Positions 11,340-64,000 of a stretch of 64,000 bases of DNA are shown here, piece by piece. The position numbers and the translations under genes are program-made. Origin of the DNA: Phyllobates terribilis (Eukaryota); contig NW_027362764.1 in NCBI RefSeq assembly GCF_046119375.1, positions 415,896,001 through 415,960,000 on the forward strand, read 5' to 3'. The notes beneath the pieces are model-generated. The model saw only the letters and a program-made list of their open reading frames with translations. It was not told the DNA's origin and ran no database searches. How positions within the stretch are numbered: the first letter of the stretch is position 1; every line of letters begins with the position of its first letter.

Positions 11340-12895
11340 ATAATAAATATTTATATATGTGTGTGTGTATATAATATCCCAAATGGGATGCATTTTTTTG
11401 CATATATTGGAGAAATCTTCAGCAATTTTTTTTTTGGCACAGATTGTGCATATTGTAACTTACATACTTCGCACCCGATGCAGTAAAGTACGTGATGTGC
11501 GTTAGTTAACAAAAAGTGTTTGATGTCTCGATAACTGTCATACGTAACATCATACATTTTTTTCTTTGCTGCATAAGAACAGACGTTACATCTATTACAC
11601 TCACGTTTGTAAAATCCTTGAGTGGTGAACCATTTTTTGGGGTATCTTTTTCAATAAAGAGGCTTTGTGATAGAATATTACCAAAAGATTTGCCTCTTTT
11701 AGCAACAAAACGGCATCCATTGTCAACAGTTTTTTTCTTTCAAAACCTCGTCCCGATGCAACAGAGGTAAGTATTTAATAACATTTTTTATTTCATTGAA
11801 CTGTGCTAAAAGCTGGTTTCACAGCTTTATATTTGAAGGGTTTTGCATCATATAATAGAGACTCTTTAGACATCAACCTGCCTTTCAGTAAGTGCACTGG
11901 AATTTTTGTTGTAGTCTTTGTTTCTATTTTTCTTTTGCATAAACTTGAGTATTGGAGCTAATTCGTTTAGCCCTAATAAATTCTCCATATGGAGTAGATT
12001 CAACTGTGTGCTTGGTGCTGACAACTAGTAGCTAACAGTATTGTGTTGCCAGATATTTTTTTCTTAAATATGGAGATATGTACCTGACTATTATAACAGC
12101 ATCCCCCAACCCAAAAAAATGTAATCCAAAAATGCACTACTGGTGGTGAGAAATCGTTGGTATTGAAATAGTTAATGAGATCTGGTACAACCTTCACTGC
12201 AACCTTACACACCATAAGTATGTCGTCCATGTATCGGCTAGATATTTAATTAATAAAAATGTTGTTACTAGAAAAAACAAATATTTTTTCCCACCACCCA
12301 ACATAAAGGATTGCTGTGAATGTCGAGAATCTTGATCCCATTGGCAATCCTTCATTTTGTAAAAAGGATTATTTATCAACATAAAGAAATTGTGACCAAT
12401 AAAATACTCGTCTGCAATCAGCTGGATTTCAGTGCACAGGAATAGGAACTGTGTTTGTTCAAATGTTATTTCAGGGCAACAAGTTCCTTATCATGGGGCA
12501 TACATGAGTAGAGGTTCACAATATCACTCACAACAAAAATGTGGTTGCGCCACTACACGAAGCCGTCCATGGCTTTAAAGACTATGAACTGTCCTTCAAA
12601 AAAAAACTGAAATCCTGCTGGCTAAAGGCTGCAGATTGTTGTCAGTCCAGGCAATGAGCCTCTCATCAAGAGCCCCAATGCCTGAGATGATAGAGCGTAA
12701 TGGAGGAGGGGAGACATCCATAGGAGTTTTTTTGCAGACTGTGGAAAATGGGTGTAATTGGCTGGGTGTTGCAAATAAGTTTTACAGAATTATTGCCTAA
12801 AACCTCTCAATTTTCGACCCTGCTTTAACATATCAATAAGAGTAGATGAAAACAGGATTGTGGGATCAGATTGTAATCTCCAATATGTTGCATTA
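11340..12895 (-). mobile_element. Penelope-like element (RT plus GIY-YIG remnant), decayed
   Basis: Minus-strand PIFHSL..PPPLRSIISGIG, DIVNLYSCMPHD and HVLYCIGCEVCKLQY (GIY-YIG-like); interrupted at 12896 by the capsid-NTD-only LTR element. Confidence 0.7.
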
Positions 12896-13382
12896 TGTAA
12901 TGCACACGCCCGGGCTGAGCGGCGTGTGCGTGTGATTCCACTGGACCGTGCCGGAGAGTGAATGCCTGGAGAGGCGTAACTAGGTATTCACCCGATCCGA
13001 CCAGGGTCGCACGACGGCATGCGACGCCAGTGCACCCAGGAGGAACCGAGCAGAGGGACCAGGTGCTACTCCAGGACAGACCCCGGACACGGCTGTTGAC
13101 CCACACAGGGGAATACAGGAACAGACTGGTTAGGCTGGCACACAGACTGGTGGGAATAGGCAGGCACGACTGGTATGCGGGCAGGCGGGTATGAAGGCAG
13201 GGGGGTACAGGCAAGCACGGCTAGAGTGCAGACAGGAAGGCACTAGCAGGCAGGAACACAGGCGGGATAGGACCCAGTACACACTGGGACTCTGGAACAG
13301 AACCACAGATGTGGCAGACAAACACAGCAAAGTGAGGCCGCCCAGAGAGGTGAGCGAGAGCAAGGCAGGACGAGACCGCCTG

Positions 13383-14027
13383 GAGCGGTGAGCAAGAGCA
13401 GAGCAGGACGAGACCGCCTGGAGCGGTGAGCAAGAGCAGAGCAGGACGAGACCGCCTGGAGCGGTGAGCAAGAGCAGAGCAGGACGAGACCGCCTGGAGC
13501 GGTGAGCAAGAGCAGAGCAGGACGAGACCGCCTGGAGCGGTGAGAAAGAGCAGAGCAGAACGAGACCTCCTGGAGCGGTGAGCAAGAGCAGAGCAGGACG
13601 AGACCGCCTGGAGCGGTGAGCAAGAGCAGAGCAGGACGAGACCGCCTGGAGCGGTGAGCAAGAGCAGAGCAGGACGAGACCGCCTGGAGCGGTGAGCAAG
13701 AGCAGAGCAGGACGAGACCGCCTGGAGCGGTGAGCAAGAGCAGAGCAGGACGAGACCGCCTGGAGCGGTGAGCAAGAGCAGAGTAGGACGAGACCGCCTG
13801 GAGCGGTGAGCAAGAGCAGAGCAGGACGAGACCGCCTGGAGCACTGAGCAAGAGCAGAGCAGGACGAGACCGCCTGGAGCGGTGAGCAAGAGCAGAGTAG
13901 GACGAGACCGCCTGGAGCGGTGAGCAAGAGCAGAGCAGGACGAGACCGCCTGGAGCGGTGAGCAAGAGCAGAGCAGGACGAGACCGCCTGGAGCGGTGAG
14001 CAAGAGCAGAGCAGGACGAGACTGCCG
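13383..14027. repeat. 38-bp minisatellite, 17 units
   Basis: Unit GAGCGGTGAGCAAGAGCAGAGCAGGACGAGACCGCCTG; starts at 13383 and recurs every 38 bp to 13991. Confidence 0.95.
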
Positions 14028-14319
14028 GAGCAGTGAGCAAAGGAGTCAGAGCGGAGCGAGACTGAGCAGGGGGAACAGGGCTCTGTTCACACGGAACAGA
14101 CAGGAAGGAAAAGGCAGAGCCAGATACCCACAAGGTACTTGCAGTGAAGTAGCGAGTGGACCACAAACACACAAACGGGAGTACAGAGACAACAAGCAGG
14201 AGTTAGGTACGAGTTCAGACTCTGCAGAAAATGGAAAGGAACGGACATAGAGGCAAAACAGGTAAAGGATAGGAGAGAGTTCAGACTGGAACTGAGTGTA
14301 CGGAAGAGACCGACACTGC

Positions 14320-14640
14320 AGCGGGATACAGGAGCGGGTCTGGGAATACGGCCCCCAGAGAGGCGGGACGAACAGGCAAGGAGCGTGTTCAGACAGGACA
14401 GACAAGATACAGGAGCGGGTCTAGGTAATCGGCCCCTAGAAGGCGGGAGGAACAGGCTAGGAGCGAGTTCAGACAGGACAGACAAGATACAGGAGCGGGT
14501 CTAGGTAATCGGCCCCTAGATGGCGTGAGGAACAGGCTAGGAGCAAGTTCAGACAGGACAGACAAGATACAGGAGCGGGTCTAGGTAATCGGCCCCTAGA
14601 AGGCGGGAGGAACAGGCTAGGAGCGTGTTCAGACAGGCCT
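14320..14640. repeat. 80-bp tandem repeat, about 4 units (mirrored at about 18180-18500)
   Basis: GACAAGATACAGGAGCGGGTCTAGG recurs at 14401, 14481 and 14561. Confidence 0.9.
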
Positions 14641-14986
14641 GGAAATACAGCCTCCAGGATAGGCAGACAAGAGAACACAGAACGGGACCTGGCACCTTCA
14701 GAGTGCAAGCACACACTGAATGAAACACAATGCTCAGGCAGGGATTGATTGGAGCAGCTGGGTTATATACCAGGTGACAGACAGCAATAGGCTGAGGACG
14801 CACAAGGGGTGTGAACCCCAGCAGGTACAAAAAGCAGGAAGTGATCGGGCGCCGCCCTTAAGCAGCAGAAACAGACACAAACAGACAGCATGGAGGGAAG
14901 CCAGAGAGACATTCTGGACTGGAGATCAAGTGTGCGCTCTTGCACAGTGGGAGATGGACCACCATGCAAGGGCGCCGCCAGGTATG

Positions 14987-16690
14987 TTACAGTACCCCCC
15001 CCTTACGCCCCCTCTTCTTCAGGCCTGCCAGAATCTTCCGCAGGGAATTCGAGGGCCAATCCTTCACTTCAAGGAGATCACTTCCACTGTCCACAGGAAA
15101 AACTGGTCTCATCTGGTTAGCTAGGATGCTACCTCCTATCCAGCCATCCTCAGCAACAGACGAAACGGGTGGAGTACCAGGAACAGCACACAAGGAAGTC
15201 TCTCTCCACATATTTTCAGGTGGCACCCCAGAGGGTACAGGAGACAACTTGAAGTCCTCCACCGGGTTGGAGGGGAGCAGAGACTTGGGGGTAAACTCTG
15301 CTTCGAGGTACATCTTGTCAAGCTCACAGGAAGAAATAGACGGGTTATCAGGTACAGGATGAGGAAAAATCACTGTCTCTTTGTTACCTGGTGGTACCCC
15401 GGAGGATTCAGGAAACAACTGGAGGTCCTCCGCCGGGTCAGAAGAGTGCAGAGGCTCAGAGAAAACATCTGCTTCAGAGTACACTAGGTCGGACTCACTG
15501 GACGAAGCAGGCGAGGTATCGGGTACCGAGTATAGGAAAGTCTCTGTCCATTCACCACCAGGTGGCACCCCGAAGGGTTCTGGAGACAACTGGAGGCCCT
15601 CCGCCCGGTCGGAGGGGTGTAGAGACTCGGGAGTAACCTCTGCTTTGGAGTACACTAGGTTGGACTTACTGGACGAAGCGAGCGAGGTATCAGGTACAGA
15701 GTATAGGAGAGTCTCTGTCCTTTCGCTACCAGGTAGCACCCCGAAGGGTTCTGGAGACAACTGGAGGTCCTCCGCCTGGTCGGAGGGGTGTAGAGACTCA
15801 GGGGTAACTACCACTTTGGGGTACCCATTGTCAGGCTCACAGGACGGAGCAGACAAAGTATCGAGTACCAGGTGTAGAGAAGTCTCTCTCCATTTGTCAT
15901 CGAGTGGTATCCCGGAGGATTCAGGAGGCAACTGGGGGTCCTCCGCCAGGTAGTAGAGGTGCACAGACTCTGAGGTAATCACAGCTTCGGAGCATCCTTG
16001 GACATGCACACCGGTTAAAGTGGGTGAAGCATCTGATGCCGGGTGCAGGAAGTTCTCCTGTGTGGAGTCTGGATGGGCAGTAGTCTCTTCGGGCAGGAGA
16101 ACTGGTGCACTACCCACGCACATTACCCGTTGGGGCTTCTCCGGGATACAGGGAGATGAAGCTTCAGTAGGAACTTCAAGGTTGGGGTCAGGAGGTCTCA
16201 GGGAGGACAGACCCTGGCGTGACGGCTTGCCTCTACGTCTAGCACGTCTGGACTGCCTCTTGAGGTTGGGAGAAGTATTCCGGAGAGCGTAGTCACCCTG
16301 TGAGGATTCTGGGTGGGCAGTAGTCTCATTGGGCTGGAGGACTATTGCGCTACCCACACACATTACCCATCGGGGCTGCTCCGGGATATTGGGAAGTGAA
16401 GCTTCAGCAGGAGCCTCCGGGTTAGGATCATCGAAGACCATTAGAAAGGCCACCAGGAAGGCCATTATGTCCAGGACGATAGGATCCTGTGTTTCCCATA
16501 GGGGATTGATCCATTCCAAGGCATCACCCGCTAGGTTAGACATAATGAATGCCACCTTAACCCGATCGGTGGGAAAACATAGAGGGTAGAACTTGAAGTG
16601 TAGCATGCATTGCTCCACAAATGCACGACTTTGTCTTGGATCCCCATAGTAATGTGGCGGATCCGCAGGAACGAGAGCAGATAGATCCAT
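14987..16690 (-). CDS. 567-aa Ty3/Gypsy capsid N-terminal domain (LDOC1/RTL/PEG10-like) fused to acidic Pro/Ser/Glu repeats
   Basis: N-terminus PPHYYGDPRQSRAFVEQC..FPTDRVKVAFIMSNLAGDALEW..FLMVFDDP aligns by eye with the chromovirus gag at 25705. Then two ~44-aa repeats, a basic stretch and about five 57-aa repeats; the stop lies inside the 3' LTR terminus. Confidence 0.85.
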   Translation of the reverse strand: MDLSALVPADPPHYYGDPRQSRAFVEQCMLHFKFYPLCFPTDRVKVAFIMSNLAGDALEWINPLWETQDPIVLDIMAFLVAFLMVFDDPNPEAPAEASLPNIPEQPRWVMCVGSAIVLQPNETTAHPESSQGDYALRNTSPNLKRQSRRARRRGKPSRQGLSSLRPPDPNLEVPTEASSPCIPEKPQRVMCVGSAPVLLPEETTAHPDSTQENFLHPASDASPTLTGVHVQGCSEAVITSESVHLYYLAEDPQLPPESSGIPLDDKWRETSLHLVLDTLSAPSCEPDNGYPKVVVTPESLHPSDQAEDLQLSPEPFGVLPGSERTETLLYSVPDTSLASSSKSNLVYSKAEVTPESLHPSDRAEGLQLSPEPFGVPPGGEWTETFLYSVPDTSPASSSESDLVYSEADVFSEPLHSSDPAEDLQLFPESSGVPPGNKETVIFPHPVPDNPSISSCELDKMYLEAEFTPKSLLPSNPVEDFKLSPVPSGVPPENMWRETSLCAVPGTPPVSSVAEDGWIGGSILANQMRPVFPVDSGSDLLEVKDWPSNSLRKILAGLKKRGRKGGVL

Positions 16691-16831
16691 CTGGACGGGT
16701 GCGTAATTAGCCAGGAACTCAGCTAGAGAAAAAAAAATTGTATTTATTTATTTTTAATGCATGTATTCTCTGGAAAACGTCTCAGAGAGCGAAGGCCGTG
16801 GGGCTCAACGGGAACCATGGCCTGAGCATGC

Positions 16832-18851
16832 TGTAATGCACACGCCCGGGCTGAGCGGCGTGTGCGTGTGATTCCACTGGACCGTGCCGGAGAGTGAATG
16901 CCTGGAGGGGCGTAACTAGGTATTCACCCGATCCGACCAGGGTCGCACGACGGCATACGACGCCAGTGCACCCAGGAGGAACCGAGCAGAGGGACCAGGT
17001 GCTACTCCAGGACAGACCCCGGACACGGCTGTTGACCCACACAGGGGAATACAGGAACAGACTGGTTAGGCTGGCACACAGACTGGTGGGAATAGGCAGG
17101 CACGACTGGTATGCGGGCAGGCGGGTATGCAGGCAGGGGGGTACAGGCAAGCACGGCTAGAGTGCAGACAGGAAGGCACTAGCAGGCAGGAACACAGGCG
17201 GGATAGGACCCAGTACACACTGGGACTCTTGAACAGAACCACAGATGTGGCAGACAAACACAGCAGAGTGAGGCCACCCAGAGAGGTGAGCGAGAGCAAG
17301 GCAGGACGAGACCGCCTGGAGCGGTGAGCAAGAGCAGAGCAGGACGAGACCGCCTGGAGCGGTGAGCAAGAGCAGAGCAGGACGAGACCATCTGGAGCGG
17401 TGAGCAAGAGCAGAGCAGGACGAGACCGCCTGGAGCGGTGAGCAAGAGCAGAGCAGGACGAGACCGCCTGGAGCGGTGAGCAAGAGCAGAGCAGGACGAG
17501 ACCGCCTGGAGCGGTGAGCAAGAGCAGAGCAGGACGAGACCGCCTGGAGCGGTGAGCAAGAGCAGAGCAGGACGATACCGCCTGGAGCGGTGAGCAAGAG
17601 CAGAGCAGGACGAGACCGCCTGGAGCGGTGAGCAAGAGCAGAGCAGGACGAGACCGCCTGGAGCGGTGAGCAAGAGCAGAGCAGGACGAGACCGCCTGGA
17701 GCGGTGAGCAAGAGCAGAGCAGGACGAGACCGCCTGGAGCGGTGAGCAAGAGCAGAGCAGGACGAGACCGCCTGGAGCGGTGAGCAAGAGCAGAGCAGGA
17801 CGAGACCGCCTGGAGCGGTGAGCAAGAGCAGAGTAGGACGAGACCGCCTGGAGCGGTGAGCAAGAGCAGAGCAGGACGAGACTGCCGGAGCAGTGAGCAA
17901 AGGAGTCAGAGCGGAGCGAGACTGAGCAGGGGGAACAGGGCTCTGTTCACACGGAACAGACAGGAAGGGAAAGGCAGAGCCAGATACCCACAAGGTACTT
18001 GCAGTGAAGTGGCTAGTGGACCACAAACACACAAACGGGAGTACAGAGACAACAAGCAGGAGTTAGGTACGAGTTCAGACTCTGCAGAAAAAGGAAAGGA
18101 ACGGACATAGAGGCAAAACAGGTAAAGGATAGGAGAGAGTTCAGACTGGAACTGAGTGTACGGAAGAGACCGACACTGCAGCGGGATACAGGAGCGGGTC
18201 TGGGAATACGGCCCCCAGAGAGGCGGGACGAACAGGCAAGGAGCGTGTTCAGACAGGTCAGACAAGATACAGGAGCGGGTCTAGGTAATCGGCCCCTAGA
18301 AGGTGGGAGGAACAGGCTAGGAGCGAGTTCAGACAGGACAGACAAGATACAGGAGCGGGTCTAGGTAATCGGCCCCTAGATGGCGGGAGGAACAGGCTAG
18401 GAGCAAGTTCAGACAGGACAGACAAGATACAGGAGCGGGTCTAGGTAATCAGCCCCTAGAAGGCGGGAGGAACAGGCTAGGAGCGTGTTCAGACAGGCCT
18501 GGAAATACAGCCTCCAGGATAGGCAGACAAGAGAACACAGAACGGGACCTGGCACCTTCAGAGTGCAAGCACACACTGAATGAAACACAATGCTGAGGCA
18601 GGGATTGATTGGAGCAGCTGGGCTATATACCAGGTGACAGACAGCAATAGGCTGAGGACGCACAAGGGGTGTGACCCACAGCAGGTACAAAAAGCAGGAA
18701 GTGATCGGGCGCCGCCCTTAAGCAGCAGAAACAGACACAAACAGACAGCATGGAGGGAAGCCAGAGAGACATTCTGGACTGGAGATCAAGTGTGCGCTCT
18801 TGCACAGTGGGAGATGGACCACCATGCAAGGGCGCCGCCAGGTATGTTACA
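16832..18851 (-). repeat. 5' LTR (2020 bp) of the capsid-NTD-only element
   Basis: TG..CA termini; 15 units of the 38-bp repeat (17319-17887); TATA-like box at 18629-18623. Confidence 0.92.
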
Positions 18852-18966
18852 CATTACTGCCCATAATACTGAAGGGAAGGACATTTTTTTTCATATAAAT
18901 ACGAGAGAGAGGGGCAAGGGTAAGAATCTTGTATCTTGTAGATATCTGTTGCTTTGTCTAGATATA

Positions 18967-20595
18967 CAGTACAGACCAAAAGTTTGGACACACCTTCTCA
19001 TTTAAAGATTTTTCTGTATTTTCATGACTATGAAAATTGTACATTCACACTCAAGGCATCAAAACTATGAATTAACACATGTGGAATTATATACTTAACA
19101 AAAAACTGTGAAACAACTGAAAATATGTCTTATATTCTAGTTTCTTCAAAGTAGCCACTTTTTGCTTTGTTGACTGCTTTGCACACCCTTGCATTCTCTT
19201 GATGAGCTTCAAGAGGTAGTCACTGGAAATGGTCTTCCAACAATCTTGAAGGAGCTCCCAGAGATGCTTAGCACTTGTTGGCCCTTTTGCCTTCACTCTG
19301 CGGTCCAGCTCACCCCAAACCATCTCGATTGGGTTCAGGTCTGGTGACTGTGGAGGCCAGGTCATCTGGCGTAGCACCCCATCACTCTCCTTCTTGGTCA
19401 AATAGCCCTTACACAGCCTGGAGGTGTGTTTGGGGTCATTGTCCTGTTGAAAAATAAATGATGGTCCAGCTAAACGCAAACTGGATGGAATAGCATGCCT
19501 CTGCAAGATGCTGTGGTAGCCATGCTGGTTCAGTATGCCTTCAATTTTGAATAAATCCCCAACAGTGTCACCAGCAAAGCACCTCCACACCATCACACCT
19601 CCTCCTCCATGCTTCACGGTGGGAACCAGGCATGTAGAGTCCATCCGTTCACCTTTTCTGCGTCGCACAAAGACACGGTGGTTGGAACCAAAGATCTCAA
19701 ATTTGGACTCATCAGATCAAAGCACAGATTTCCACTGGTCTAATGTCCATTCCTTGTGTTCTTTAGCCCAAACAAGTCTCTTCTGCTTGTTGCCTGTCCT
19801 TAGCAATGGTTTCCTAGCAGCTATTTTACCATGAAGGCCTGCTGCACAAAGTCTCCTCTTAACAGTTGTTGTAGAGATGTGTCTGCTGCTAGAACTCTGT
19901 GTGGCATTGACCTGGTCTCTAATCTGAGCTGCTGTTAACCTGCGATTCCTGAGGCTGGTGACTCGGATAAACTTATCCTCAGAAGCAGAGGTGACTCTTG
20001 GTCTTCCTTTCCTGGGGCGGTCCTCATGTCAGCCAGTTTCTTTGTAGCGCTTGATGGCTTTTGCAACTGCACTTGGGGACACTTTCAAAGTTTTCCCAAT
20101 TTTTTGCACTGACTGACCTTCATTTCTTAAAATAATGATGGCCACTCATTTTTCTTTACTTTGCTGCTTTTTTCTTGCCATAATACAAATTCTAACAGTC
20201 TATTCAGTAGGACTATCAGCTGTGTATCCACCATACTTCTGCACAACACAACTGATGGTCCCAACCCCATTTATAAGGCAAGAAATCCCACTTATTAAAC
20301 CTGACAGGGCACACCTGTGAAGTGAAGACCATTTCCGGTGACTACCTCTTGAAGCTCATCAAGAGAATGCCAAGAGTGTGCAAAGCAGTCATCAAAGCAA
20401 AAGGTGGCTACTTTGAAGATCCTAGAATATAAGACATATTTTCAGTTGTTTCACACTTTTTTGTTAAGTATATAATTCCACATGTGGTAATTCATAGTTT
20501 TGATGCCTTCAGTGTGAATGTACAATTTTCATAGTCATGAAAATACAGAAAAATCTTTAAATGAGAAGGTGTGTCCAAACTTTTGGTTTGTACTG
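18967..20595 (-). mobile_element. Tc1 family A, full length, frameshifted
   Basis: TA flanks, same TIRs as 1664-3288; ORF 19087-19668 with QQDNDPKH and SPDLNPIE. Confidence 0.95.
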
Positions 20596-20886
20596 TAGAT
20601 GTTAAAACACAAACATTACTATTCGCATAATTGTAAAACATGCTTCACTCAATGTATTGTTTTCAAGCATATATACCACAGCTTGAAATAATTATGTTTA
20701 TTAAGTACTCACATGCGATTGGTTCATATGGGTTTTATATACTCTCCCATGACTCTTTGATTTAAACTGAGTACGGGCGTTATTGTTACGCCAGGAACGC
20801 TTCAGTCTTTCATGGCTTTCATGTGAACCTCTCTTGTGTGCCGCTCTTTTTCTCTATATGTATCTTAGAACTACATATGTGGATAA

Positions 20887-25235: not shown

Positions 25236-28200
25236 TGTTAGAACCTTGCTGTTAGTTTTTTTTCCTTTGCTGGTCACATGACCTTGTTGGCCTATTTAAT
25301 CCTGCTCCGCCCTTCTGGCTTTGCTGGACTTCATTGTATATCTACTTTCTAGCTAGCCTGTGCTCTGTATCTAACTCTGTTAGTTTGCTTGGTCTACGGA
25401 CCTCTATGTTCTATCTATTTTGTTTGTTCGTCTGTCTGCTACTATTTCTGTTAGGAGGTGTCCCATATTCCTCCCAGTCCTTAGTACTTGTAGGGATTCC
25501 CTCCCCACATCTATAGGTCTCCGTACAGACTAGATTAGGACTTTAGCAGGTCTGATCGCAGGATCAGGTTCCCTGTTACATCGTAGGGATTCAGCTGAGT
25601 CCTATAGTAGGGACAGATCTCCTCTCTTTCCTTAGCTTTGGTAGCAGAACATAACAGTAAGTCCAGCCAGCAAATTCTCTAAGGAAAGATTTTTCTGTTC
25701 CATCATGGTGTCGGTTCAGGATTTGGCTCATCGCCTGCAGGGACTCTCTCTGGAGGTGGCCGAGCTCCGTCAGCACGTGAGTAACTGTCCTGGAGCACAT
25801 TTCTTGGAGCCTAAGGTATGTTTGCCGGATTTATTTTTTGGTGAACACCGAGAATTTTTTTCATTTAAAAATGCTTGCTTATTGTATTTTCGTTTGAGAC
25901 CTAAGTCCTCTGGGGATGAATCCCAGCGCGTAGGGTTCATAATGTCACTTTTGCGCAAAGAGCCTCAGGAGTGGGCCTTTTCTTTGCAACCTAGTGATTC
26001 ATGCTTCAGATCAGTGGATAGTTTTTTTTCTGCTTTGGGACTATTATATGATGATCCTGACCGTGTCGCATCAGCTGAGACTGAGTTGAGACGTTTAAAA
26101 CAAGGATCAGGTAATGTGGAAAAATATTGTACACATTTTCGTCGTTGGTCCACTCAAACAGGGTGGAACGATTCTGCTCTGAAAAGTCTATTTCTTGCTG
26201 GGCTCAGTGAAAGGGTTAAAGACCTGCAAATTGCTTATCCTACACCTGAGGATTTGCAACAGGCTATGCAATTAGCTATACGGGTGGATAGAAGACTGCG
26301 TGCTAGGGTTAATGAGAGCAAATCCTCTGCTATGTCAGTTTCTGGTTATGATAATGTGTGTACTAACAATGGTGAACCGATGGAGATTGGATCGGTGGCA
26401 CCTCGCTCTCAAGAAAAAGACCGTCGTTTTTCGGAAGGCTTGTGTTTCTATTGCGGAAAATCTGGTCATTTGATTAAAGGCTGTGAGCTTCGTATGAAGA
26501 AAGAAAAAAAAATGGTCAGTCACGCCCGTATTGCCTGTTTAAATTCCAAGGGTATATTTTTAGCTGCTTCCACGATTGCTCAGGAAAAATTAATGGAATT
26601 TCGGGTGTTTGTTGATTGCGGGTCTACACTGAATGTTATTGATGGGGGATTCGTGGAAAAACTCAATTTAAAACCTGAACCTTTATCATCCCCCATTGCT
26701 GTGGTTTCTGTGGATGGTTCCCCTTTGAAGAATATTACTCTCAAGGTCAGTGAATTTCCTCTCACTATTAATGGTGTTCACCATGAGAAATTGGATTTGG
26801 TAGTGTTGAATAACTTGCCTTCTCCAGTAATATTGGGTTTGCCCTGGTTAAAATTTCACAATCCTGTACTGGATTGGTCTACCAGTGAAATTAAATCCTG
26901 GAGCCATAAATGTTATGACAAGTGTTGTAACGGGCGTATTGCAGCTTTGGATAGGGGAGAATTGCCTGTTCCTATTCAGGATTTTTGGAGAGTTTTTTCT
27001 GAGAAAGAATCGCAGGTTTTGCCTCCCCATAGAGACTATGATTGTTCTATTGAATTTGTCCCTGGAGCGACTCTTCCTAAAAGTCGTTTATTTAACCTTA
27101 CTATTCCTGAGAGGAAGGCTTTGGAGGAATACATACAGACAAGCTTGGCCGCCGGTCACATTAGGCCCTCTAAGTCTCCTGTGGCGGTTGGATTTTTTTT
27201 TGTAAAAAAAAAGGACGGCGGTTTACGTCCTTGTCTGGATTTTCGTGAGATTAACAAAATTACGGTACGCAATCCTTACCCACTGCCATTGATTCCTGAT
27301 CTGTTTAACCAGTTATTGGGGGCCAAGTGGTTCTCTAAAATTGACCTTAAGGGGGCATACAATCTGTTGCGCATGAAGGAGGGTGATGAATGGAAGACTG
27401 CTTTTAACACTCCTGTGGGTCATTTTGAGAATCTGGTTATGCCTTTTGGTCTTACTAATGCTCCTGCATTTTTTCAGAATCTGATTAATGACATCCTTAG
27501 ACCTTTGATCGGTAAAAATGTGGTTGTGTATTTGGATGACATTTTGATTTATTCGCCAGATCTGGAGTCTCATTGGCGGAGCGTGCGTGAGGTATTACAG
27601 TTATTAATGGACAATTCGCTTTTTGCTAAGCTGGAGAAATGTGAGTTCGCTGTACAGAGAATTAGTTTTTTGGGCTACATTATCTCCAGCAAAGGTTTTG
27701 AGATGGATCCGGTTAAGGTTCAGGCTGTGCAGGAATGGCCTAGGCCTATTGGTTTGAAATCGATACAGAGGTTTTTGGGTTTCGCCAATTACTATAGAAA
27801 ATTCATAAAAAATTTTTCTAGTATTGTCAAACCTCTGACTGATCTCACCAGGAAAGGTGCTGATGCGGTTCAGTGGTCTTCTGAGGCCATTGAAGCTTTT
27901 GTGTATCTCAAAGAGAGGTTCACCTCTGCTCCCATCCTTATGCAGCCTGATGTTACTAGGCCGTTTTTGGTTGAGGTTGATGCTTCCTCTGTGGGGGTTG
28001 GCGCAGTATTGTCTCAGGATAACGGGGATGGATTACATCCCTGTGCCTTTTTTTCAAAAAAATTTTCGGAGACTGAATTGAATTACGATATTGGTAATCG
28101 GGAATTATTGGCTATTAAACTCGCATTTGAACACTGGCGCCACTTCTTGGAAGGTGCGGAATTTCCCGTTCAGGTTCTTACGGATCATAAAAATCTGATA

Positions 28201-30205
28201 TATCTTGATGCTGCCAAGCGCCTGAATGCCCGTCAGGCTAGGTGGGCACTGTTTTTCTCGCGGTTTAATTTCTCCGTTACTTACATCCCTGGTACTAAGA
28301 ATGTTAAGGCGGATGCCTTGTCTCGCAGTTTTTCTCCCATAGTCGGTGCTGAGAAAGAGGAAAACATTTTACAAGAAGGTGTTGTGATAGCTGCTTTAGA
28401 CTCCGTTTTGGAAGATGAGATTCTTAAAGCTCAGGAGAATGCCCCATCTAACACTCCTCATGGGAGGTTGTTTGTGCCTGGGACCTTTAGGAGAGATTTG
28501 TTTGTTGAGTGTCACGAATCTCGGTTGGCAGGTCATCCCGGAATCTCTGAGACCAAGAGACTGGTGGGTCGCAGTTTTTGGTGGCCTGGATGGCAGAAGG
28601 AAGTCATTAAGTGGGTGCGCCAATGTACTATATGTGCTAGATCTAAGTCCTCACATACTCCTGCTGCGGGGTTGCTTTGTCCTTTGGAGGTCCCCAGTGC
28701 TCCTTGGACACATTTGGCTATGGACTTTATAACTGACCTTCCCCCCTCTGAGGGTTTTACTGTCATCTGGGTGGTCGTGGACCGTTTTAGCAAGATGTGT
28801 CACTTGGTTCCCTTCGTCAAACTGCCCTGCGCTAAAACTCTCGCTAAGGCCTTTGTCAAGGAAATTGTCAGACTTCATGGCGTTCCTACTGACATTGTTT
28901 CTGATAGGGGTCCTCAGTTCGTGGCTCGTTTTTGGCGTGCCTTTTGTGACAGGTTGGGAATTCATTTGTCGTTTTCGTCCGGATATCATCCTGAATCTAA
29001 TGGCCAGACAGAAAGGAAAAACCAGGATGTTGAGCAGTTCTTGCGTTGTTTTGTGGCAGACAATCAAGAGGGGTGGTCTGAGTTTCTGCCACTTGCCGAA
29101 TTTGCTCTGAACAATCATACATCTTCTTCTGCTGGTTGTTCGCCTTTTTTTTGTTGTTCTGGGAGACATCCGTCGTTTGGGTCGTTCTCCAAGTTGGGAT
29201 CTGCCGTGCCTGAGGAGGAGAATTTTTCCGGTGATTTGGAAAGAGTTTGGACGGATGTGCGTGGTAATCTTCAGGAGGCCAACAGAAAATCTAAAGACTA
29301 CTTTGATAGGAAACGACAGGAGGTTTTGTTCGCTGTTGGTGACATGGTTTGGTTGTCCTCTAGGAATCTGCGGTTGAGGATTCCTTCTAAGAAATTGGGT
29401 CCCAAGTTTGTAGGGCCCTTTAAGGTGCTTCAGGTTGTCAACCAATCTGCTGTTAGGTTGGAGGTTCCTACCTCCTGGAGAATTAATCCGGTCTTTCATG
29501 TCTCTCTGTTAAAAAAAGCTGTTGTGTCGGATGGTGACGCCTCTGCCTCTGTTCCTCCGGTGGTGGAGGACGGGGAATATGAAATTTCTCGCATCCTTGA
29601 CTCTAGACGGTATAGAGGTAGTTTGCAGTATCTTGTGGCCTGGAAAGGTTTCGGACCCGAGGATAACTCTTGGGTGAGGTCAGATGATGTTTCCGCGTCC
29701 AGACTTATCAGAGCGTTTCACAGGAGATTTCCTGATAAGCCTGGTCCTAGGGGATCCGGAGGATCCTCTTAGAAGGGGGGGTACTGTTAGAACCTTGCTG
29801 TTAGTTTTTTTTCCTTTGCTGGTCACATGACCTTGTTGGCCTATTTAATCCTGCTCCGCCCTTCTGGCTTTGCTGGACTTCATTGTATATCTACTTTCTA
29901 GCTAGCCTGTGCTCTGTATCTAACTCTGTTAGTTTGCTTGGTCTACGGACCTCTATGTTCTATCTATTTTGTTTGTTCGTCTGTCTGCTACTATTTCTGT
30001 TAGGAGGTGTCCCATATTCCTCCCAGTCCTTAGTACTTGTAGGGATTCCCTCCCCACATCTATAGGTCTCCGTACAGACTAGATTAGGACTTTAGCAGGT
30101 CTGATCGCAGGATCAGGTTCCCTGTTACATCGTAGGGATTCAGCTGAGTCCGATAGTAGGGACAGATCTCCTCTCTTTCCTTAGCTTTGGTAGCAGAACA
30201 TAACA
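25236..30205 (+). mobile_element. Apparently intact Ty3/Gypsy chromovirus (Tf1/sushi group)
   Basis: 421-bp LTRs (25236-25656, 29785-30205) with one visible mismatch; TSD GCTGG; PPT AGAAGGGGGGGTAC; single uninterrupted ORF. Confidence 0.97.
25705..29772 (+). CDS. Gag-Pol polyprotein: CA, CCHC knuckle, protease, RT, RNase H, integrase, chromodomain
   Basis: CFYCGKSGHLIKGC; VDCGS; YLDDILIYS; EVDAS..TDHKNL; H..GHPG..C..C; DRGPQF..E; YLVAWKGFGPEDNSW. Confidence 0.97.
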   Translation: MVSVQDLAHRLQGLSLEVAELRQHVSNCPGAHFLEPKVCLPDLFFGEHREFFSFKNACLLYFRLRPKSSGDESQRVGFIMSLLRKEPQEWAFSLQPSDSCFRSVDSFFSALGLLYDDPDRVASAETELRRLKQGSGNVEKYCTHFRRWSTQTGWNDSALKSLFLAGLSERVKDLQIAYPTPEDLQQAMQLAIRVDRRLRARVNESKSSAMSVSGYDNVCTNNGEPMEIGSVAPRSQEKDRRFSEGLCFYCGKSGHLIKGCELRMKKEKKMVSHARIACLNSKGIFLAASTIAQEKLMEFRVFVDCGSTLNVIDGGFVEKLNLKPEPLSSPIAVVSVDGSPLKNITLKVSEFPLTINGVHHEKLDLVVLNNLPSPVILGLPWLKFHNPVLDWSTSEIKSWSHKCYDKCCNGRIAALDRGELPVPIQDFWRVFSEKESQVLPPHRDYDCSIEFVPGATLPKSRLFNLTIPERKALEEYIQTSLAAGHIRPSKSPVAVGFFFVKKKDGGLRPCLDFREINKITVRNPYPLPLIPDLFNQLLGAKWFSKIDLKGAYNLLRMKEGDEWKTAFNTPVGHFENLVMPFGLTNAPAFFQNLINDILRPLIGKNVVVYLDDILIYSPDLESHWRSVREVLQLLMDNSLFAKLEKCEFAVQRISFLGYIISSKGFEMDPVKVQAVQEWPRPIGLKSIQRFLGFANYYRKFIKNFSSIVKPLTDLTRKGADAVQWSSEAIEAFVYLKERFTSAPILMQPDVTRPFLVEVDASSVGVGAVLSQDNGDGLHPCAFFSKKFSETELNYDIGNRELLAIKLAFEHWRHFLEGAEFPVQVLTDHKNLIYLDAAKRLNARQARWALFFSRFNFSVTYIPGTKNVKADALSRSFSPIVGAEKEENILQEGVVIAALDSVLEDEILKAQENAPSNTPHGRLFVPGTFRRDLFVECHESRLAGHPGISETKRLVGRSFWWPGWQKEVIKWVRQCTICARSKSSHTPAAGLLCPLEVPSAPWTHLAMDFITDLPPSEGFTVIWVVVDRFSKMCHLVPFVKLPCAKTLAKAFVKEIVRLHGVPTDIVSDRGPQFVARFWRAFCDRLGIHLSFSSGYHPESNGQTERKNQDVEQFLRCFVADNQEGWSEFLPLAEFALNNHTSSSAGCSPFFCCSGRHPSFGSFSKLGSAVPEEENFSGDLERVWTDVRGNLQEANRKSKDYFDRKRQEVLFAVGDMVWLSSRNLRLRIPSKKLGPKFVGPFKVLQVVNQSAVRLEVPTSWRINPVFHVSLLKKAVVSDGDASASVPPVVEDGEYEISRILDSRRYRGSLQYLVAWKGFGPEDNSWVRSDDVSASRLIRAFHRRFPDKPGPRGSGGSS

Positions 30206-34503: not shown

Positions 34504-35249
34504 CAGAGTCCAAATTTGAGATCTTTGGTTCCAACCACCACGTCTTTGTGCAACGCAGAAAAGGTGAACGGATGGACTCTACATGCCTGGTTCCCACCGT
34601 GAAGCATGGAGGAGGAGGTGTGATGTTGTGGGGGTGCTTTGCTGGTGACACTGTTGGGGATTTATTCAAAATTGAAGGCATACTGAACCAGCATGGCTAC
34701 CACAGCATCTTGCAACGGCATGCTATTCCATCCGGTTTGCATTTAGTTGGACCATCATTTATTTTTCAACAGGACAATGACCCCAAACACACCTCCAGGC
34801 TGTGTAAGGGCTATTTGACCAAGAAGGAGAGTGATGGGGTGCTACGCCAGATGACCTGGCCTCCACAGTCACCAGACCTGAACCCAATCGAGATGGTTTG
34901 GGGTGAGCTGGACCGCAGAGTGAAGGCAAAAGGGCCAACAAGTGCTAAGCATCTCTGGGAGCTCCTTCAAGATTGTTGGAAGACCATTTCCAGTGACTAC
35001 CTCTTGAAGCTCATCAAGAGAATGCAAGGGTGTGCAAAGCAGTCAACAAAGCAAAAAGTGGCTACTTTGAAGAACCTAGAATATAAGACATATTTTCAGT
35101 TGTTTCACAGTTTTTTGTTAAGTATATAATTCCACATGTGTTAATTCATAGTTTTGATGCCTTGAGTGTGAATGTACAATTTTCATAGTCATGAAAATAC
35201 AGAAAAATCTTTAAATGAGAAGGTGTGTCCAAACTTTTGGTCTGTACTG
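34504..35249 (+). mobile_element. 3' half of Tc1 family A inside the hAT
   Basis: Begins abruptly at ESKFEIFG, ends with the full TIR plus TA; left half deleted. Confidence 0.9.
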
Positions 35250-49063: not shown

Positions 49064-49099
49064 TATATATAGATATATATATATTTATATCTGTATATA

Positions 49100-61348: not shown

Positions 61349-64000
61349 TGTTATGCACACGCCCGGACTGACTGGTGTGTGCGGGAGAAGTGGTTCCACT
61401 GGACCATGAACCGGAGAGTGCCTGGAGGGGCGTGACTAAGTATCTGGCCGATCCGACCAAGGTGGCACGACGGCATACGACGCCAGTGCACCAGGGAGAA
61501 ACCGGGCAGAGGGACCAGGTGCTACTCCAGGTCAAACTCCGGACACGGGGGTTGACCCACACAGGGATTACTGGAACAGGCAGGTTAGGCTGGCTCAGAC
61601 TGGTGGATATAAGCGAACACGGCAGGTATGCAGACGGGTGGATACAGGCGAGTATGCAGGCAGGGAGGTACTGGCAGAAAGGACGGGCTGGAGCTCAGAG
61701 AGGACAAGGCCCAGTACAGACTGGGACACAGAAACAGAACCGCAGATGCGGTAGCCAAACACAGCAGAGAGGGAACGCCCGAAGCGGTGGGCAAGAGCAG
61801 AGCAGGACGGGACTGCCGGAGCAGCGAGCACAAGCAGAGCAGGACAGGACTGCCGGAGCAGCGAGCAGATGCAGAGCTGGACGGGGCTGCCGGAGCAGCG
61901 AGCAGAAGCAGAGCAGAAACCGCAGGAGCGGCAAGCAAGGCAAGAGCAGAGTGGAAACCGCAAGAGCGGTAAACAAGGCAGGAGCAGAGCGGAAACCGCA
62001 GAGCGGCTAAGAAGGCCGCAGCAGAGCGGAAACCGTAGAGCGGAAAACAAGGCAGGAGCAGAGCGGAAACCGCAGAGCTGCTAAGTAGGCAGGAGCAGAG
62101 CGGAAACCGCAGAGCGGTAAACAAGGCAGGAGCAGAGCGGAAACCGCAGAGCGGTAAACAAGGCAGGAGCAGAGCGGCTAAGAAGGCAGGAGCAGAGCGG
62201 AAACCGCAGAGCGGCAAACAAGGCAGGAGCAGAGCGGAAACCGCAGAGCGGCAAACAAGGCAGGAGCAGAGCGGAAACCGCAGGAGCAGCAAGCAAGGCA
62301 AGAGCAGAGCAGAAACCGCAAGAGCGGCAAGCTAAGCAGGAGCGGAGAGGAAACCGCAGAGCGGTAAACAAGGCAGGAGCAGAGCGGAAACCGCAGAGCG
62401 GCAAACAAGGCAGGAGCAGAGCGGGAACCGCAGAGCGGCAAACAAGGCAGGAGCAGAGCGGGAACCGCAGAGCGGCAAACAAGGCAGGAGCAGAGCGGGA
62501 ACCGCAGAGCGGCAAACGAGACAAGGCAAGGAGATAGGACTCTGTTCACAAAGAACAGACAGAGAAGGAAAGGCAGAACCAGAAGCACACAAAGTACTTG
62601 CAAAGAAGTAGCGAGCGTACACTAAATTCACAACAGAGGTACAGAGACGATGAGAAGGAATTTAGGAGCAAGTTCAGACTCTGCAGAAAGGCGCAGAAAA
62701 CAGGCATAGAGGGAAAAGGGAGAAAAGGCTAAAGTAGAAACGAGGCGCAGACAACTGGGAACAGAGGAACGGGAACAAATACAGCAAGGCTGGGACACAA
62801 ACAGGACTCTGTTCAGACGGGAACAGATACCGCAAGGCACAGACAACTGGAAACAGAGGAACGGGAACAAATACAGCAAGGCTGGGACACAAACAGGACT
62901 CTGTTCAGACGGGAACAGATACCGCAAGGCACAGACAGGCAGATCTAGGAATACAGCCCCTAGAAGGCGAAAGAACAGGCTAGAAGCGTGTTCACAAGAA
63001 CAGACCACAGTTCAGACACAGAACTGGAGAACAGGCAGGAAAACAGGATAGGACCTGGCACGTCAGAGACAAAAAGCCAACTGACAGGACACAATGCTCA
63101 GGCGCCATCTTGAGGAAGAAGGTGGTATAAATACCCAAAGATGGACAGCAATAGGCTGAAGGTGCAACAGGGGCGTGTCCGCAGCAGGTACAAGAAACAG
63201 GAAGTTCAGCGGGCGTCGCCCTATGCAGCCAAAACAGACAAACAGACAGCAAGGAGGGAAGCCAGAGAGACATTCTGGACTGGAGATCAAGTGCGCGCTC
63301 TTGCACAGTGGAAGATGGACCACCATGCAAGGACGCTGCCAGGTATGTTACAGTACCCCCCCCCCATTACGCCCCCTCTTCTTCAGGCCTGCCAGAATCT
63401 TCCGCAGGGAATTCGAGGACCAGTCGTTCACTTCAAGGAGATCACTTCCACTGTCCACAGGAAAATTGATCTCATCTGGTTAGCTAGGATGCTACCTCCT
63501 ATCCAGCCATCCTTAGCAACAGACGAAACGGGTGGAGTACCAGGAACAGCACACAAAGGAGTCTCTCTCCACATATTTTCAGGTGGCACCCCAGAGGGTA
63601 CAGGAGACAACTGGAAGTCCTTCACCGGGTTGGAGGGGGACAGAGACTTGGGGGTAATCTCTGCTTCGAGGTACATCTTGTCAAGCTCACAGGAAGAAAT
63701 AGACGGGTTATCAGGTACATAATGAGGAAAAGTCACTGTCTCTTTGTTATCTGGTGGTACCCCGGAGAATTCAGGAAACAACTGGAGGTCCTCCGCCGGG
63801 TCAGAAGAGTGCAGAGGCTCAGAGAAAACATCTGCTTCAGAGTACACTAGGTCGGACTCACTGGAGGAAGCAGGCGAGGTATCGGGTACCGAATATAGGA
63901 AAGTCTCAGTCCATTCACCACCAGGTGGCACCCCGAAGGGTTCTGGAGACAACTGGAGGTCCTCCGCCTGGTCAGAGGGGTGTAGAGACTCATGGGTAAC
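61349..64000 (-). mobile_element. Second, diverged subfamily of the capsid-NTD-only LTR element (3' LTR 61349-63352 plus ORF C-terminus; rest outside the window)
   Basis: Same LTR ends and PPT; ORF 63428-63952 nearly identical to the 57-aa repeats of 14987-16690; LTR arrays are a 37-bp unit and a ~92-bp unit. Confidence 0.9.

What the first reader, a model, noticed from the sequence alone, without database searches (positions are those of the whole stretch)
12896..18851. Enzyme-less LTR retroelement: 2-kb satellite-filled LTRs flanking only a capsid-NTD gene
Seen: perfect CATTA TSD, TG..CA LTRs of 2096 and 2020 bp (about 69% of the element), chromovirus-type PPT, an intact 567-aa ORF, and no protease, RT, RNase H or integrase. 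Known: TRIM/LARD non-autonomous elements are usually non-coding, and gag-only elements normally keep a full capsid. Inference: a mobile satellite of Tf1/sushi chromoviruses that borrows Pol in trans yet keeps its own novel protein. The autonomous element at 25236 shares PPT (GGGGGGTAC), 5-bp TSD, TGT..TAACA/TTACA ends and priming geometry, so its clade is a plausible helper. I do not recognise this architecture as a described family.
Basis: partly seen in the sequence, partly recalled or inferred. Interest (0 to 1): 0.88.

Follow-up and report, generated by a model that had tools for sequence, protein, structure and literature searches.

The report
Pol-less LTR retrotransposon with half-capsid ORF
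This is a real, fairly young LTR retrotransposon copy that has lost all its enzymes and keeps only the front lobe of a capsid gene fused to repetitive filler; it is an ordinary kind of "hitch-hiker" element with two unusual traits (2-kb repeat-filled LTRs and a half-capsid ORF), and I found no sign that its protein is under selection.

Summary
The element spans 12896-18851 on the minus strand. Its LTRs are 2096 and 2020 bp and 98.7% identical. It has TG..CA ends, a perfect CATTA target duplication and a G-rich polypurine tract. A 567-aa ORF fills the interior and no pol domain is present.

The ORF has three parts. Residues ~9-90 form a confidently folded Ty3/gypsy capsid N-terminal lobe (DUF4939), up to 52% identical to Gag of autonomous elements. 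Residues ~100-567 are predicted disordered, built of in-frame 240-nt and 171-nt tandem repeats, and have no homologue among 1.84 billion proteins. The frame then reads through the polypurine tract and stops inside the LTR.

A second, diverged copy at 61349-64000 has the same pol-less 3' interior, so this is a family, not a one-off deletion. Ka/Ks tests on the repeat part cannot be told from off-frame controls.

Best reading: a non-autonomous LTR retrotransposon of chromovirus-like descent, copied by enzymes supplied in trans. It lies in the known LARD/TR-GAG continuum. The neighbouring intact chromovirus shares the tract end and LTR tips, but not the leader or a close Gag. A working half-capsid protein is not excluded (about 0.2).

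The parts
12891..12895 (.). Target-site duplication CATTA, left copy
   Evidence: Read directly; identical to 18852-18856.
12896..14991 (-). 3' LTR in element sense, 2096 bp, TG..CA ends
   Evidence: 98.7% identical to 16832-18851. The only length difference is one 76-nt gap, equal to two satellite units.
13334..14062 (.). 38-nt tandem array, 19.1 units, inside the 3' LTR
   Evidence: TRF reports 95% matches. The counterpart at 17281-17922 has 16.8 units.
14325..14637 (.). 80-nt tandem array, 3.9 units, inside the 3' LTR
   Evidence: TRF; counterpart at 18185-18497.
14992..15020 (-). Polypurine tract ending GGGGGGGGTAC directly before the 3' LTR; it lies inside the ORF
   Evidence: Read directly. 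Copy 2 and the autonomous element at 29771-29784 end the same way. The third LTR element in the window does not.
14987..16690 (-). 567-aa ORF: capsid N-lobe, then repeats, then a tail. Its stop codon lies inside the 3' LTR
   Evidence: Pfam finds DUF4939 only. HMMER hits cover aa 9-110 only.
16421..16666 (-). Coding sequence for the capsid N-terminal lobe, aa ~9-90
   Evidence: DUF4939 E 9e-7. 51-52% identity to Gag of P0001 and P0002. All 10 near-invariant family positions are kept. AlphaFold pLDDT is 93-98 with 4-5 helices. The best fold matches are Arc, Ty1 and PNMA capsid lobes, all with E > 0.1.
16057..16430 (-). 240-nt (80-aa) in-frame duplication, starting exactly where Gag homology ends
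   Evidence: the repeat finder family D6, 81% identity; protein register shown.
15125..15992 (-). Five in-frame 171-nt (57-aa) tandem units, rich in Ser, Pro, Leu and Glu
   Evidence: TRF reports 4.5 copies at 76% matches. Five units in register have pN/pS 0.84, against 0.72 and 0.80 off-frame. pLDDT is below 50.
16691..16831 (-). 141-nt leader between the 5' LTR and the ORF; the primer-binding site is expected here but not identified
   Evidence: No complement of 8 nt or more to the LTR. The best duplex is no better than shuffles. Three upstream ATGs open short uORFs.
16832..18851 (-). 5' LTR in element sense, 2020 bp
18852..18856 (.). Target-site duplication CATTA, right copy
61349..63352 (-). 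3' LTR of a second family copy, about 2004 bp, with its own 37-nt and 92-nt arrays
   Evidence: BLASTN to copy 1, TRF, boundaries. Identity to copy 1 is 45-89% over most of the LTR, but 91-94% in the ~150 nt next to the interior.
63353..64000 (-). Polypurine tract and 3' interior of the second copy, cut by the window end. It matches the C-terminal repeats and tail of the ORF; the frame is broken once by a frameshift
   Evidence: 94-98% nucleotide identity to copy 1. tblastn gives 92% amino-acid identity in two frames. No pol sequence lies next to the polypurine tract.
25236..30205 (+). Neighbouring autonomous chromovirus, the candidate helper clade. LTRs are 421 bp with 1 mismatch, the target duplication is GCTGG, and one 1355-aa gag-PR-RT-RH-IN-chromodomain ORF spans 25705-29772

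Best explanation
Proposed identity. The element is one copy of a family of non-autonomous LTR retrotransposons descended from a Ty3/gypsy element with a DUF4939-type Gag. Chromoviruses carry that type of Gag.

Proposed history.
- An ancestor lost everything from the middle of the capsid to the end of pol.
- What remains of the coding region is a start codon and the capsid N-terminal lobe.
- Downstream of the lobe, the interior was later filled by in-frame tandem duplications: 240 nt x 2 and 171 nt x 5.
- The LTRs grew to 2 kb through 38-nt and 80-nt arrays.

Proposed mechanism.
- The element is transcribed from its 5' LTR.
- Its RNA is packaged, reverse-transcribed from the leader and the polypurine tract, and integrated with a 5-bp duplication. 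Gag, RT/RNase H and integrase all come from an autonomous element in the same genome.
- The likely supplier clade has the same polypurine-tract end and LTR tips as the intact chromovirus at 25236-30205.

The ORF. The 567-aa ORF is most likely a leftover. The N-lobe is still well formed. The repeat tail is open because frame-preserving units were multiplied on a strand where that frame has few stops. It is not open because its amino-acid sequence matters.

Shown versus inferred.
- Shown: the structure, the lack of enzymes, family status, the domain content and the absence of detectable coding constraint on the tail.
- Inferred: supply of enzymes in trans, the identity of the helper, and the ORF being non-functional.
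For: Transposition hallmarks:
- Perfect 5-bp duplication, TG..CA ends, 98.7% identical LTRs and a polypurine tract abutting the 3' LTR.

No enzymes:
- Pfam and an exhaustive HMMER search give 881 hits. The top 150 match aa 9-110 only, and none reaches E < 1e-30.

Descent from Gag:
- 51-52% identity to the Gag N-lobe of P0001 and P0002. P0002 also carries protease, RNase H and integrase. Other hits, P0027 and P0058, carry a chromodomain.

Family status:
- A second copy has different flanks and the same repeat-bearing interior next to its polypurine tract.

The tail is unconstrained:
- Ka/Ks is 0.79 between copies, against 0.81 and 0.55 off-frame.
- pN/pS is 0.84 among repeat units, against 0.72 and 0.80 off-frame.
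- The tail is predicted disordered.
- The frame has no stop of its own and reads through the polypurine tract into the LTR.
- Copy 2 has one frameshift.
- The leader has three upstream ATGs, one in a strong context.

Helper compatibility:
- The polypurine tract ends GGGGGGGTAC in both copies and in the autonomous neighbour, but not in the third LTR element.
- The U5 tip CATAACA is identical in copy 2 and the neighbour.
- The neighbour is intact, and its LTRs differ by 1 base in 421.

Known kind:
- TR-GAG, and the continuum of non-autonomous LTR elements with gag remnants (PMC4350172, PMC13570524).
Against: - The N-lobe keeps all 10 near-invariant family residues and folds with pLDDT 93-98.
- The frame carries no stop across five repeat units that differ by at least 140 substitutions. 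About 3.6 new stops would be expected, giving P about 0.03 before correcting for the choice of frame.
- Both facts would also fit selection for an open, translated frame.
- The Ka/Ks comparison between copies rests on only 24 differences, so it has little power.
- No primer-binding site could be assigned. The leader is unrelated to that of the proposed helper clade.
- The neighbour's Gag lobe is only 29% identical.
- Only two copies, one of them truncated by the window, could be examined. No genome-wide data were reachable.
Confidence: 0.7

Rival explanations
1. Same element, but the ORF is functional. On this reading the half-capsid protein (N-lobe plus a long disordered tail) is translated and binds the N-lobes of the helper's Gag. 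That would either bring the element's own RNA or protein into helper particles (an adaptor for parasitising the helper) or interfere with helper assembly, as RTL8 does with PEG10 and as truncated Gag does in Ty1.
For: - The N-lobe is intact, keeps all near-invariant residues and is confidently folded.
- The 567-codon frame has no stop, while the other two sense frames of the interior have 20 and 44.
- Zero stops where about 3.6 are expected among the diverged repeat units.
- The interior is 94-98% conserved between copies whose LTRs are 45-89% identical.
- Precedent: RTL8, an N-lobe-only protein, enters PEG10 particles and lowers their release (PMC11684626).
Against: - Ka/Ks on the tail equals the off-frame controls.
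- The frame has no dedicated stop and ends in the LTR after reading through the polypurine tract.
- Copy 2 is frameshifted.
- There are upstream ATGs, and the ORF's own start has only a moderate context.
- The P of 0.03 is post hoc and weakens to about 0.08 after allowing for three frames.
- There are no expression data.
Confidence: 0.2
2. A one-off internally deleted corpse of an autonomous element. It would have been deleted after insertion and would never have been copied in this form.
For: Internal deletions of LTR elements are common (general knowledge). Only 1.3 copies could be inspected.
Against: - A second insertion with unrelated flanks and strongly diverged LTRs has the same repeat-bearing, pol-less sequence next to its polypurine tract.
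- The repeat units have diverged by 10-44% from one another, so the rearranged interior is far older than this insertion, whose LTRs differ by 1.3%.
Confidence: 0.05
3. A host gene derived from gag (LDOC1/RTL-like) that merely lies between two solo LTRs, or an assembly artefact of repeats.
For: DUF4939 is the domain of the RTL/LDOC1 host genes. The region is rich in tandem repeats.
Against: - The two LTRs are in the same orientation and 98.7% identical. They are flanked by one perfect duplication, with the polypurine tract exactly at the inner LTR edge.
- The unit is present twice in 64 kb.
- The window contains no N runs.
Confidence: 0.03

Closest known systems
[quoted passage not shown] 2015, PMC4350172)
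   Same: An LTR pair, a polypurine tract and a 5-bp duplication. There is a single ORF related to Gag and no pol. Mobility is presumed to depend on another element, and no obvious full-length partner is known.
   Different: TR-GAGs are shorter than 4 kb and encode a whole GAG precursor. This element is 5956 bp, 69% of it LTR. It keeps only the capsid N-lobe, with no C-lobe and no zinc knuckle, followed by about 470 aa of repeats. Its host is an animal.
LARDs and the continuum of non-autonomous LTR retrotransposons with decayed domain remnants (PMC13570524)
   Same: Longer than 4 kb with long LTRs and a non-pol interior that is conserved between copies. The sugar-beet survey found domain remnants in 43 of 115 families, with frequent lack of a traceable partner.
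   Different: LARDs are defined as non-coding, whereas here a 567-codon frame is open. The LTRs are half tandem repeat.
Tf1/sushi-group chromoviruses of vertebrates (own knowledge for the group; the neighbour at 25236-30205 is one by its domain content)
   Same: Gag N-lobe of the DUF4939 type, a G-rich polypurine tract ending in TAC, a 5-bp duplication and TGT..ACA tips.
   Different: No protease, RT, RNase H, integrase or chromodomain. No self-priming complement. Gag lobe identity to the neighbour is only 29%.
RTL8 / LDOC1 (mammalian host genes consisting of a capsid N-lobe; PMC11684626)
   Same: The folded part of the protein is the same domain, and it is the N-lobe alone.
   Different: Those are single-copy host genes without LTRs. 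This ORF sits inside a mobile element, has a long disordered repeat tail, and shows no evidence of selection.
MaLR elements of mammals (non-autonomous relatives of ERV-L; own knowledge, not tested here)
   Same: A vertebrate LTR element family without pol that spread using another element's enzymes.
   Different: A different superfamily (class III ERV-like). No sequence relation was tested or expected.

Membership tests
LTR retrotransposon (structural definition) | Two direct long terminal repeats with TG..CA ends | tested here: met
   2096 and 2020 bp, 98.7% identical, TG..CA.
LTR retrotransposon (structural definition) | Target-site duplication of 4-6 bp | tested here: met
   CATTA on both sides.
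LTR retrotransposon (structural definition) | Polypurine tract directly upstream of the 3' LTR | tested here: met
   Purine-rich 29 nt ending GGGGGGGGTAC at 14992-15020, minus strand.
LTR retrotransposon (structural definition) | Primer-binding site directly downstream of the 5' LTR | tested here: inconclusive
   No self-priming complement. There are no tRNA genes in the window to compare with. A TGG begins 15 nt after the LTR, but no host tRNA set was available.
Non-autonomous LTR retrotransposon | No reverse transcriptase, RNase H, integrase or protease coding capacity | tested here: met
   Pfam at E <= 1 finds only DUF4939 and Ty3_capsid. All HMMER hits are confined to aa 9-110. The interior is 1840 bp, 93% of it taken by the ORF.
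Non-autonomous LTR retrotransposon | Multiple copies with independent insertion sites share the defective structure | tested here: inconclusive
   There are two copies in the window with different flanks. The second is seen only from its 3' LTR to 648 nt of interior, so its target duplication and 5' half are out of reach. No genome-wide data were available.
TR-GAG | Total length below 4 kb | tested here: not met
   5956 bp.
TR-GAG | Single ORF encoding a GAG precursor (capsid and nucleocapsid) | tested here: not met
   Only the N-lobe is present. Retrotrans_gag (PF03732) and zf-CCHC are not matched, whereas relatives and the neighbour match them.
LARD | Longer than 4 kb, with a non-coding but conserved interior | tested here: inconclusive
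   The length criterion is met. The interior is 94-98% conserved between two copies. It does hold a 567-codon open frame, although no coding constraint was detected.
TRIM | Total length below about 1-1.5 kb with short LTRs | tested here: not met
   5956 bp with 2-kb LTRs.
Ty3/gypsy (chromovirus-like) descent | Gag homologous to Ty3/gypsy capsid of the DUF4939/RTL type | tested here: met
   DUF4939 E 9e-7, 29.2 bits against a cut-off of 29. 881 HMMER hits, the best at 1.9e-23. Hits include proteins with PR, RT, RH, IN and chromodomain.
Tf1/sushi-type self-priming | The sequence just after the 5' LTR is complementary to the start of the transcript within the LTR | tested here: not met
   No complement of 8 nt or more in 45 nt after the LTR. 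The best duplex is -27.6 kcal/mol against a shuffled mean of -28.3. The neighbour has a 9-nt exact complement about 24 nt after a TATA-like motif.
Domesticated gag-derived host gene (RTL8/LDOC1-like) | Single-copy host locus without LTRs, under purifying selection | tested here: not met
   It lies inside an LTR element with a target duplication and is present at least twice in 64 kb. No constraint was detected on the part that could be tested.

The most novel reading that the evidence does not exclude
The half-capsid ORF may be a working gene of the parasite element. On this reading, a capsid N-lobe on a long disordered tail binds the Gag lattice of an autonomous chromovirus. It would either secure the element a place in the helper's particles or damp the helper's activity. 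That would be a mobile counterpart of RTL8 or of Ty1's truncated Gag, carried by a non-autonomous vertebrate retrotransposon. The frame would be kept open while the tail sequence drifts freely.
Probability: 0.2. Interest if true: 0.7.

Novelty: new member of a known kind. Interest (0 to 1): 0.3.

Why it matters
As it stands, this is a well-documented example of a vertebrate non-autonomous LTR retrotransposon. It is useful for repeat annotation because enzyme-based classifiers would miss it, and because its 2-kb LTRs could be mistaken for satellite DNA. It also shows tandem arrays growing inside LTRs, which is one route by which satellites arise.

It would matter more if the half-capsid protein proved to be made and selected. 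That would be a case of a parasite-of-a-parasite carrying its own capsid-binding module. It would bear on how capsid-lobe genes such as RTL8 and LDOC1 start out.

Tried and rejected
1. Looking for further copies or the source genome all failed. The exact-protein look-ups for the 567-aa ORF and for the neighbour's 1355-aa ORF were not on record. A word-indexed protein search with the whole ORF found nothing at E <= 1e-3. Protein and DNA-pattern scans of metagenome, viral and prokaryotic genome collections found nothing. Copy number, insertion polymorphism and the true partner therefore remain unknown.

2. The loci of the closest Gag relatives were not informative. P0001 and P0002 lie in genomes too large to be served. 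P0003 sits on short transcript-like contigs, where its gag is followed by a pol ORF. Its leader shows no resemblance to this element's leader by eye.

3. I considered that the ORF's C-terminal tail, which has a predicted short helix at aa 548-558, might be a remnant of the ancestral chromodomain. Pfam at E <= 10 and BLASTP against the neighbour's chromodomain region gave nothing, so I rejected the idea.

4. The third LTR element (~51071-59380) is not a candidate partner. Its Gag is 22% identical at E 0.003, and its polypurine tract and LTR tips differ.

5. Rfam found no small-RNA-like module in the LTRs or leader, such as the 5S sequence in Cassandra. There were no matches at gathering score in the window, or at E <= 1 in the element.

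6. A PDB sequence search with the N-lobe gave only chance-level hits. Ty3 Gag appeared at E 1.4.

7. The opposite orientation of the element was rejected. There is no purine tract at the other inner LTR edge, and the Gag frame is on the minus strand.

8. No paralogous empty site exists in the window. The 110 nt next to the right flank are unique, and beyond that lies a multi-copy Tc1-like repeat.

- The output allows the frame break in copy 2 to be located.
- In my private reasoning I briefly wrote two short retroviral primer-binding strings and a chromodomain motif from memory.
Full report
**Observation**

Two direct repeats lie at 12896-14991 (2096 bp) and 16832-18851 (2020 bp). A global alignment gives 26 mismatches in 2020 aligned positions and a single 76-nt gap, equal to two units of a 38-nt satellite. 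Both repeats begin TG and end CA. The pentamer CATTA flanks the element on each side, at 12891-12895 and 18852-18856. About half of each LTR is tandem repeat: a 38-nt unit x 16.8-19.1 and an 80-nt unit x 3.9. The LTRs make up 69% of the 5956-bp element. The window has no N runs.

**Orientation and interior**

The element reads on the minus strand. In that sense a purine-rich tract ending GGGGGGGGTAC abuts the 3' LTR. The other inner edge has no such tract. The 1840-bp interior has three parts:
- a 141-nt leader;
- a 567-codon ORF (16690->14987);
- nothing else.

The ORF has no stop of its own. It reads through the polypurine tract and ends at a TAA formed by the first bases of the LTR. The leader holds three upstream ATGs that open uORFs of 2-24 codons, one of them in a strong context. 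The ORF's own start has C at -3 and G at +4.

**What the ORF encodes**

- Pfam matches only DUF4939 (aa 11-86, E 9e-7, just at the curated cut-off), plus a sub-threshold Ty3_capsid match.
- An exhaustive HMMER search of 1.84 billion representative proteins gave 881 hits at E <= 1e-3. All of the best 150 match only aa ~9-110. No hit reaches E < 1e-30, so no member of this family is in that library.
- The best hits are Gag proteins or Gag-Pol models at 52% identity (P0001, P0002). P0002 also carries protease, RNase H and integrase. Other hits (P0027, P0058) carry a chromodomain.
- In those relatives the matched stretch starts near residue 99 and is followed by the rest of the capsid. Here it starts at residue 9 and stops at about residue 88, exactly where a 240-nt in-frame duplication begins.
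- All ten near-invariant positions of an alignment with 40 relatives are kept.
- AlphaFold with that alignment gives pLDDT 93-98 for aa 10-90 (four to five helices) and below 50 for nearly all of aa 100-567, apart from a short helix at 548-558.
- Foldseek against the PDB gives no significant E-value, because the query is mostly disordered. Its list is nevertheless headed by single capsid lobes: dArc1, Arc N-lobe (TM 0.58-0.66 on the target), Ty1 CA-CTD and PNMA2.

So the folded part is one capsid lobe, the N-terminal one. There is no C-lobe and no zinc knuckle. The rest of the ORF is two 80-aa units, five 57-aa units rich in Ser, Pro, Leu and Glu, and a 45-aa tail.

**Is the protein under selection?**

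Four tests were possible.
- Between copy 1 and the second copy, 179 codons of the repeat and tail region have 7 synonymous and 17 non-synonymous differences. Ka/Ks is 0.79, against 0.81 and 0.55 when the same block is read off-frame.
- Among the five 57-aa units, pooled pN/pS is 0.84, against 0.72 and 0.80 off-frame.
- The five units differ by at least 140 substitutions. With the observed transition share, about 3.6 of these should have created a stop in the ORF frame, and none is present (P about 0.03). The other two frames carry 5 and 22 stops, where 4.9 and 8.0 new ones are expected. Allowing for the choice among three frames, this is weak evidence at best.
- The second copy has one frameshift in the visible part of the frame.

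In sum, no amino-acid-level constraint is seen on the 85% of the ORF that could be tested, and there is a faint hint that the frame is kept open. The N-lobe could not be tested, because the second copy is cut off by the window before reaching it. Its intact conserved positions fit either constraint or recent derivation.

**Family status**

BLASTN of the element against the window finds a second copy at 61349-64000, in the same orientation and with unrelated flanks. It has:
- a ~2004-bp LTR with its own 37-nt and 92-nt arrays;
- the same LTR inner end and polypurine tract;
- 648 nt of interior that match the C-terminal repeats and tail of the ORF.

No integrase or chromodomain sequence lies next to its polypurine tract. 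The loss of pol therefore predates both insertions.

The identity profile between the copies is mosaic. It is 94-98% in the interior and 91-94% in the ~150 nt of the LTR next to it. It falls to 45-75% across the satellite-bearing middle of the LTR and is 77-89% at the far end. I cannot decide between recombination among co-packaged RNAs and fast turnover of the arrays.

The repeat units inside the ORF differ from each other by 10-44%, far more than the 1.3% between this copy's LTRs. The rearranged interior is therefore old relative to this insertion.

**Helper**

The neighbour at 25236-30205 is an intact, very young chromovirus:
- 421-bp LTRs with one mismatch;
- target duplication GCTGG;
- one 1355-aa ORF with Gag, protease, RT, RNase H, integrase, an SH3-like domain and a chromodomain.

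It shares several features with the finding's family. These are the end of the polypurine tract (GGGGGGGTAC), the 5-bp duplication size and the TGT start of the LTR. In copy 2 the last seven bases of the LTR (CATAACA) also match. The third LTR element of the window (~51071-59380) shares none of these beyond TG..CA, so the likeness is specific.

Three points count against a close partnership. The Gag lobes are only 29% identical. The leaders are unrelated. The neighbour also has a 9-nt exact complement between the bases just after its LTR and a site about 24 nt downstream of a TATA-like motif, as expected for Tf1-type self-priming. The finding's element has no complement of 8 nt or more, and its best duplex is no better than shuffles.

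The neighbour's clade is thus a plausible supplier of integrase and RNase H specificity. It is neither the parent lineage nor a demonstrated partner.

**Mechanism**

The steps below are inferred from established knowledge of LTR retrotransposon replication.
- Transcription starts in the 5' LTR and ends in the 3' LTR.
- The RNA is taken up into particles made by an autonomous element's Gag.
- Minus-strand synthesis is primed in the leader, and plus-strand synthesis at the polypurine tract.
- Integration by the helper's integrase recognises the TG..CA tips and gives the 5-bp duplication.

Only the end products are shown here: the duplication, the near-identical LTRs and two independent copies. 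U3, R and U5 could not be delimited. There is one TATA-like motif at LTR position 223 and no canonical poly(A) signal.

**Comparison with known kinds**

Pol-less LTR elements that keep gag are described as TR-GAG in plants. They share the LTRs, the polypurine tract, the primer site, the 5-bp duplication and the frequent lack of an obvious partner (PMC4350172). This element fails two of their defining features: length below 4 kb, and a complete GAG.

By length and long LTRs it fits LARDs, which are defined as non-coding. A 2026 survey argues that these classes form a continuum. It found domain remnants in 43 of 115 non-autonomous families (PMC13570524). This element sits in that continuum.

N-lobe-only capsid proteins are known as host genes. 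RTL8 binds the N-lobe of PEG10 capsid, enters its particles and lowers their release (PMC11684626). That is the model for the more novel reading, in which the half-capsid protein is functional. I give that reading about 0.2.

**Verdict**

The element is a new member of a known kind, a non-autonomous LTR retrotransposon of chromovirus-like descent in a vertebrate. It has two uncommon traits: 2-kb, half-satellite LTRs, and an ORF reduced to the capsid N-lobe plus repeats. Interest is modest unless the protein proves to be made and selected.

No data from the rest of the host genome could be reached, and Dfam and Repbase could not be consulted. The host was not identified. Tc1/Sleeping-Beauty-like transposases and the type of Gag point to a fish or another cold-blooded vertebrate.

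Two slips are declared. The outputs allow the frame break of copy 2 to be located. In my reasoning I briefly wrote two short primer-binding strings and a chromodomain motif from memory.

Noticed in passing
window 25236-30205 (+): An intact, very young chromovirus. Its 421-bp LTRs differ by 1 base, the target duplication is GCTGG, and a single 1355-aa ORF runs from Gag to chromodomain. A 9-nt exact complement links the bases just after the 5' LTR to LTR position 88, about 24 nt after a TATA-like motif. This is the layout expected for Tf1-type self-priming.
   Followed up: partly
window ~51071-59380 (-): A third LTR retroelement. Its LTRs are at least 1.1 kb and 96% identical, and its Gag is PNMA-type with a zinc knuckle. 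Pol is split over several reading frames, with at least two interruptions beyond the gag/pol overlap. Its polypurine tract and LTR tips are unlike the other two families.
   Followed up: partly
window 61349-64000 versus 12896-15650: Mosaic conservation between the two copies of the finding's family. The interior and the adjoining ~150 nt of the LTR are 91-98% identical, while the rest of the LTR is 45-89% identical, with different satellite units (37 versus 38 nt, 92 versus 80 nt). This suggests recombination between subfamilies or very fast array turnover. It remains unexplained.
   Followed up: partly
window 1658-1932, 2902-3291, 18962-19351, 20324-20600, 34865-35251, 49095-49371, 50344-50734: At least seven pieces of one Tc1-like transposon family, 93-99.7% identical. 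Separate Tc1/Sleeping-Beauty-like transposase ORFs lie at 46983-48134 (383 codons, HTH_SB plus DDE_3) and 49514-50449. Together with three LTR families, these make the window a dense nest of transposons in which no host gene was seen.
   Followed up: partly
window 16720-16775 (-), in the element's leader: An A/T-rich insert-like stretch with AATAAA-type motifs is followed by a T-run and CTCTAG, about 30 nt before the ORF start. It resembles a poly(A) signal or a splice-acceptor context. Its meaning is unknown.
   Followed up: no
window 13130-14172 and 17066-18032 (-): The 38-nt LTR satellite is open in all three minus-strand frames, giving mechanical ORFs of 202-309 codons. A gene caller could report these as proteins. 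They are artefacts of the repeat.
   Followed up: yes
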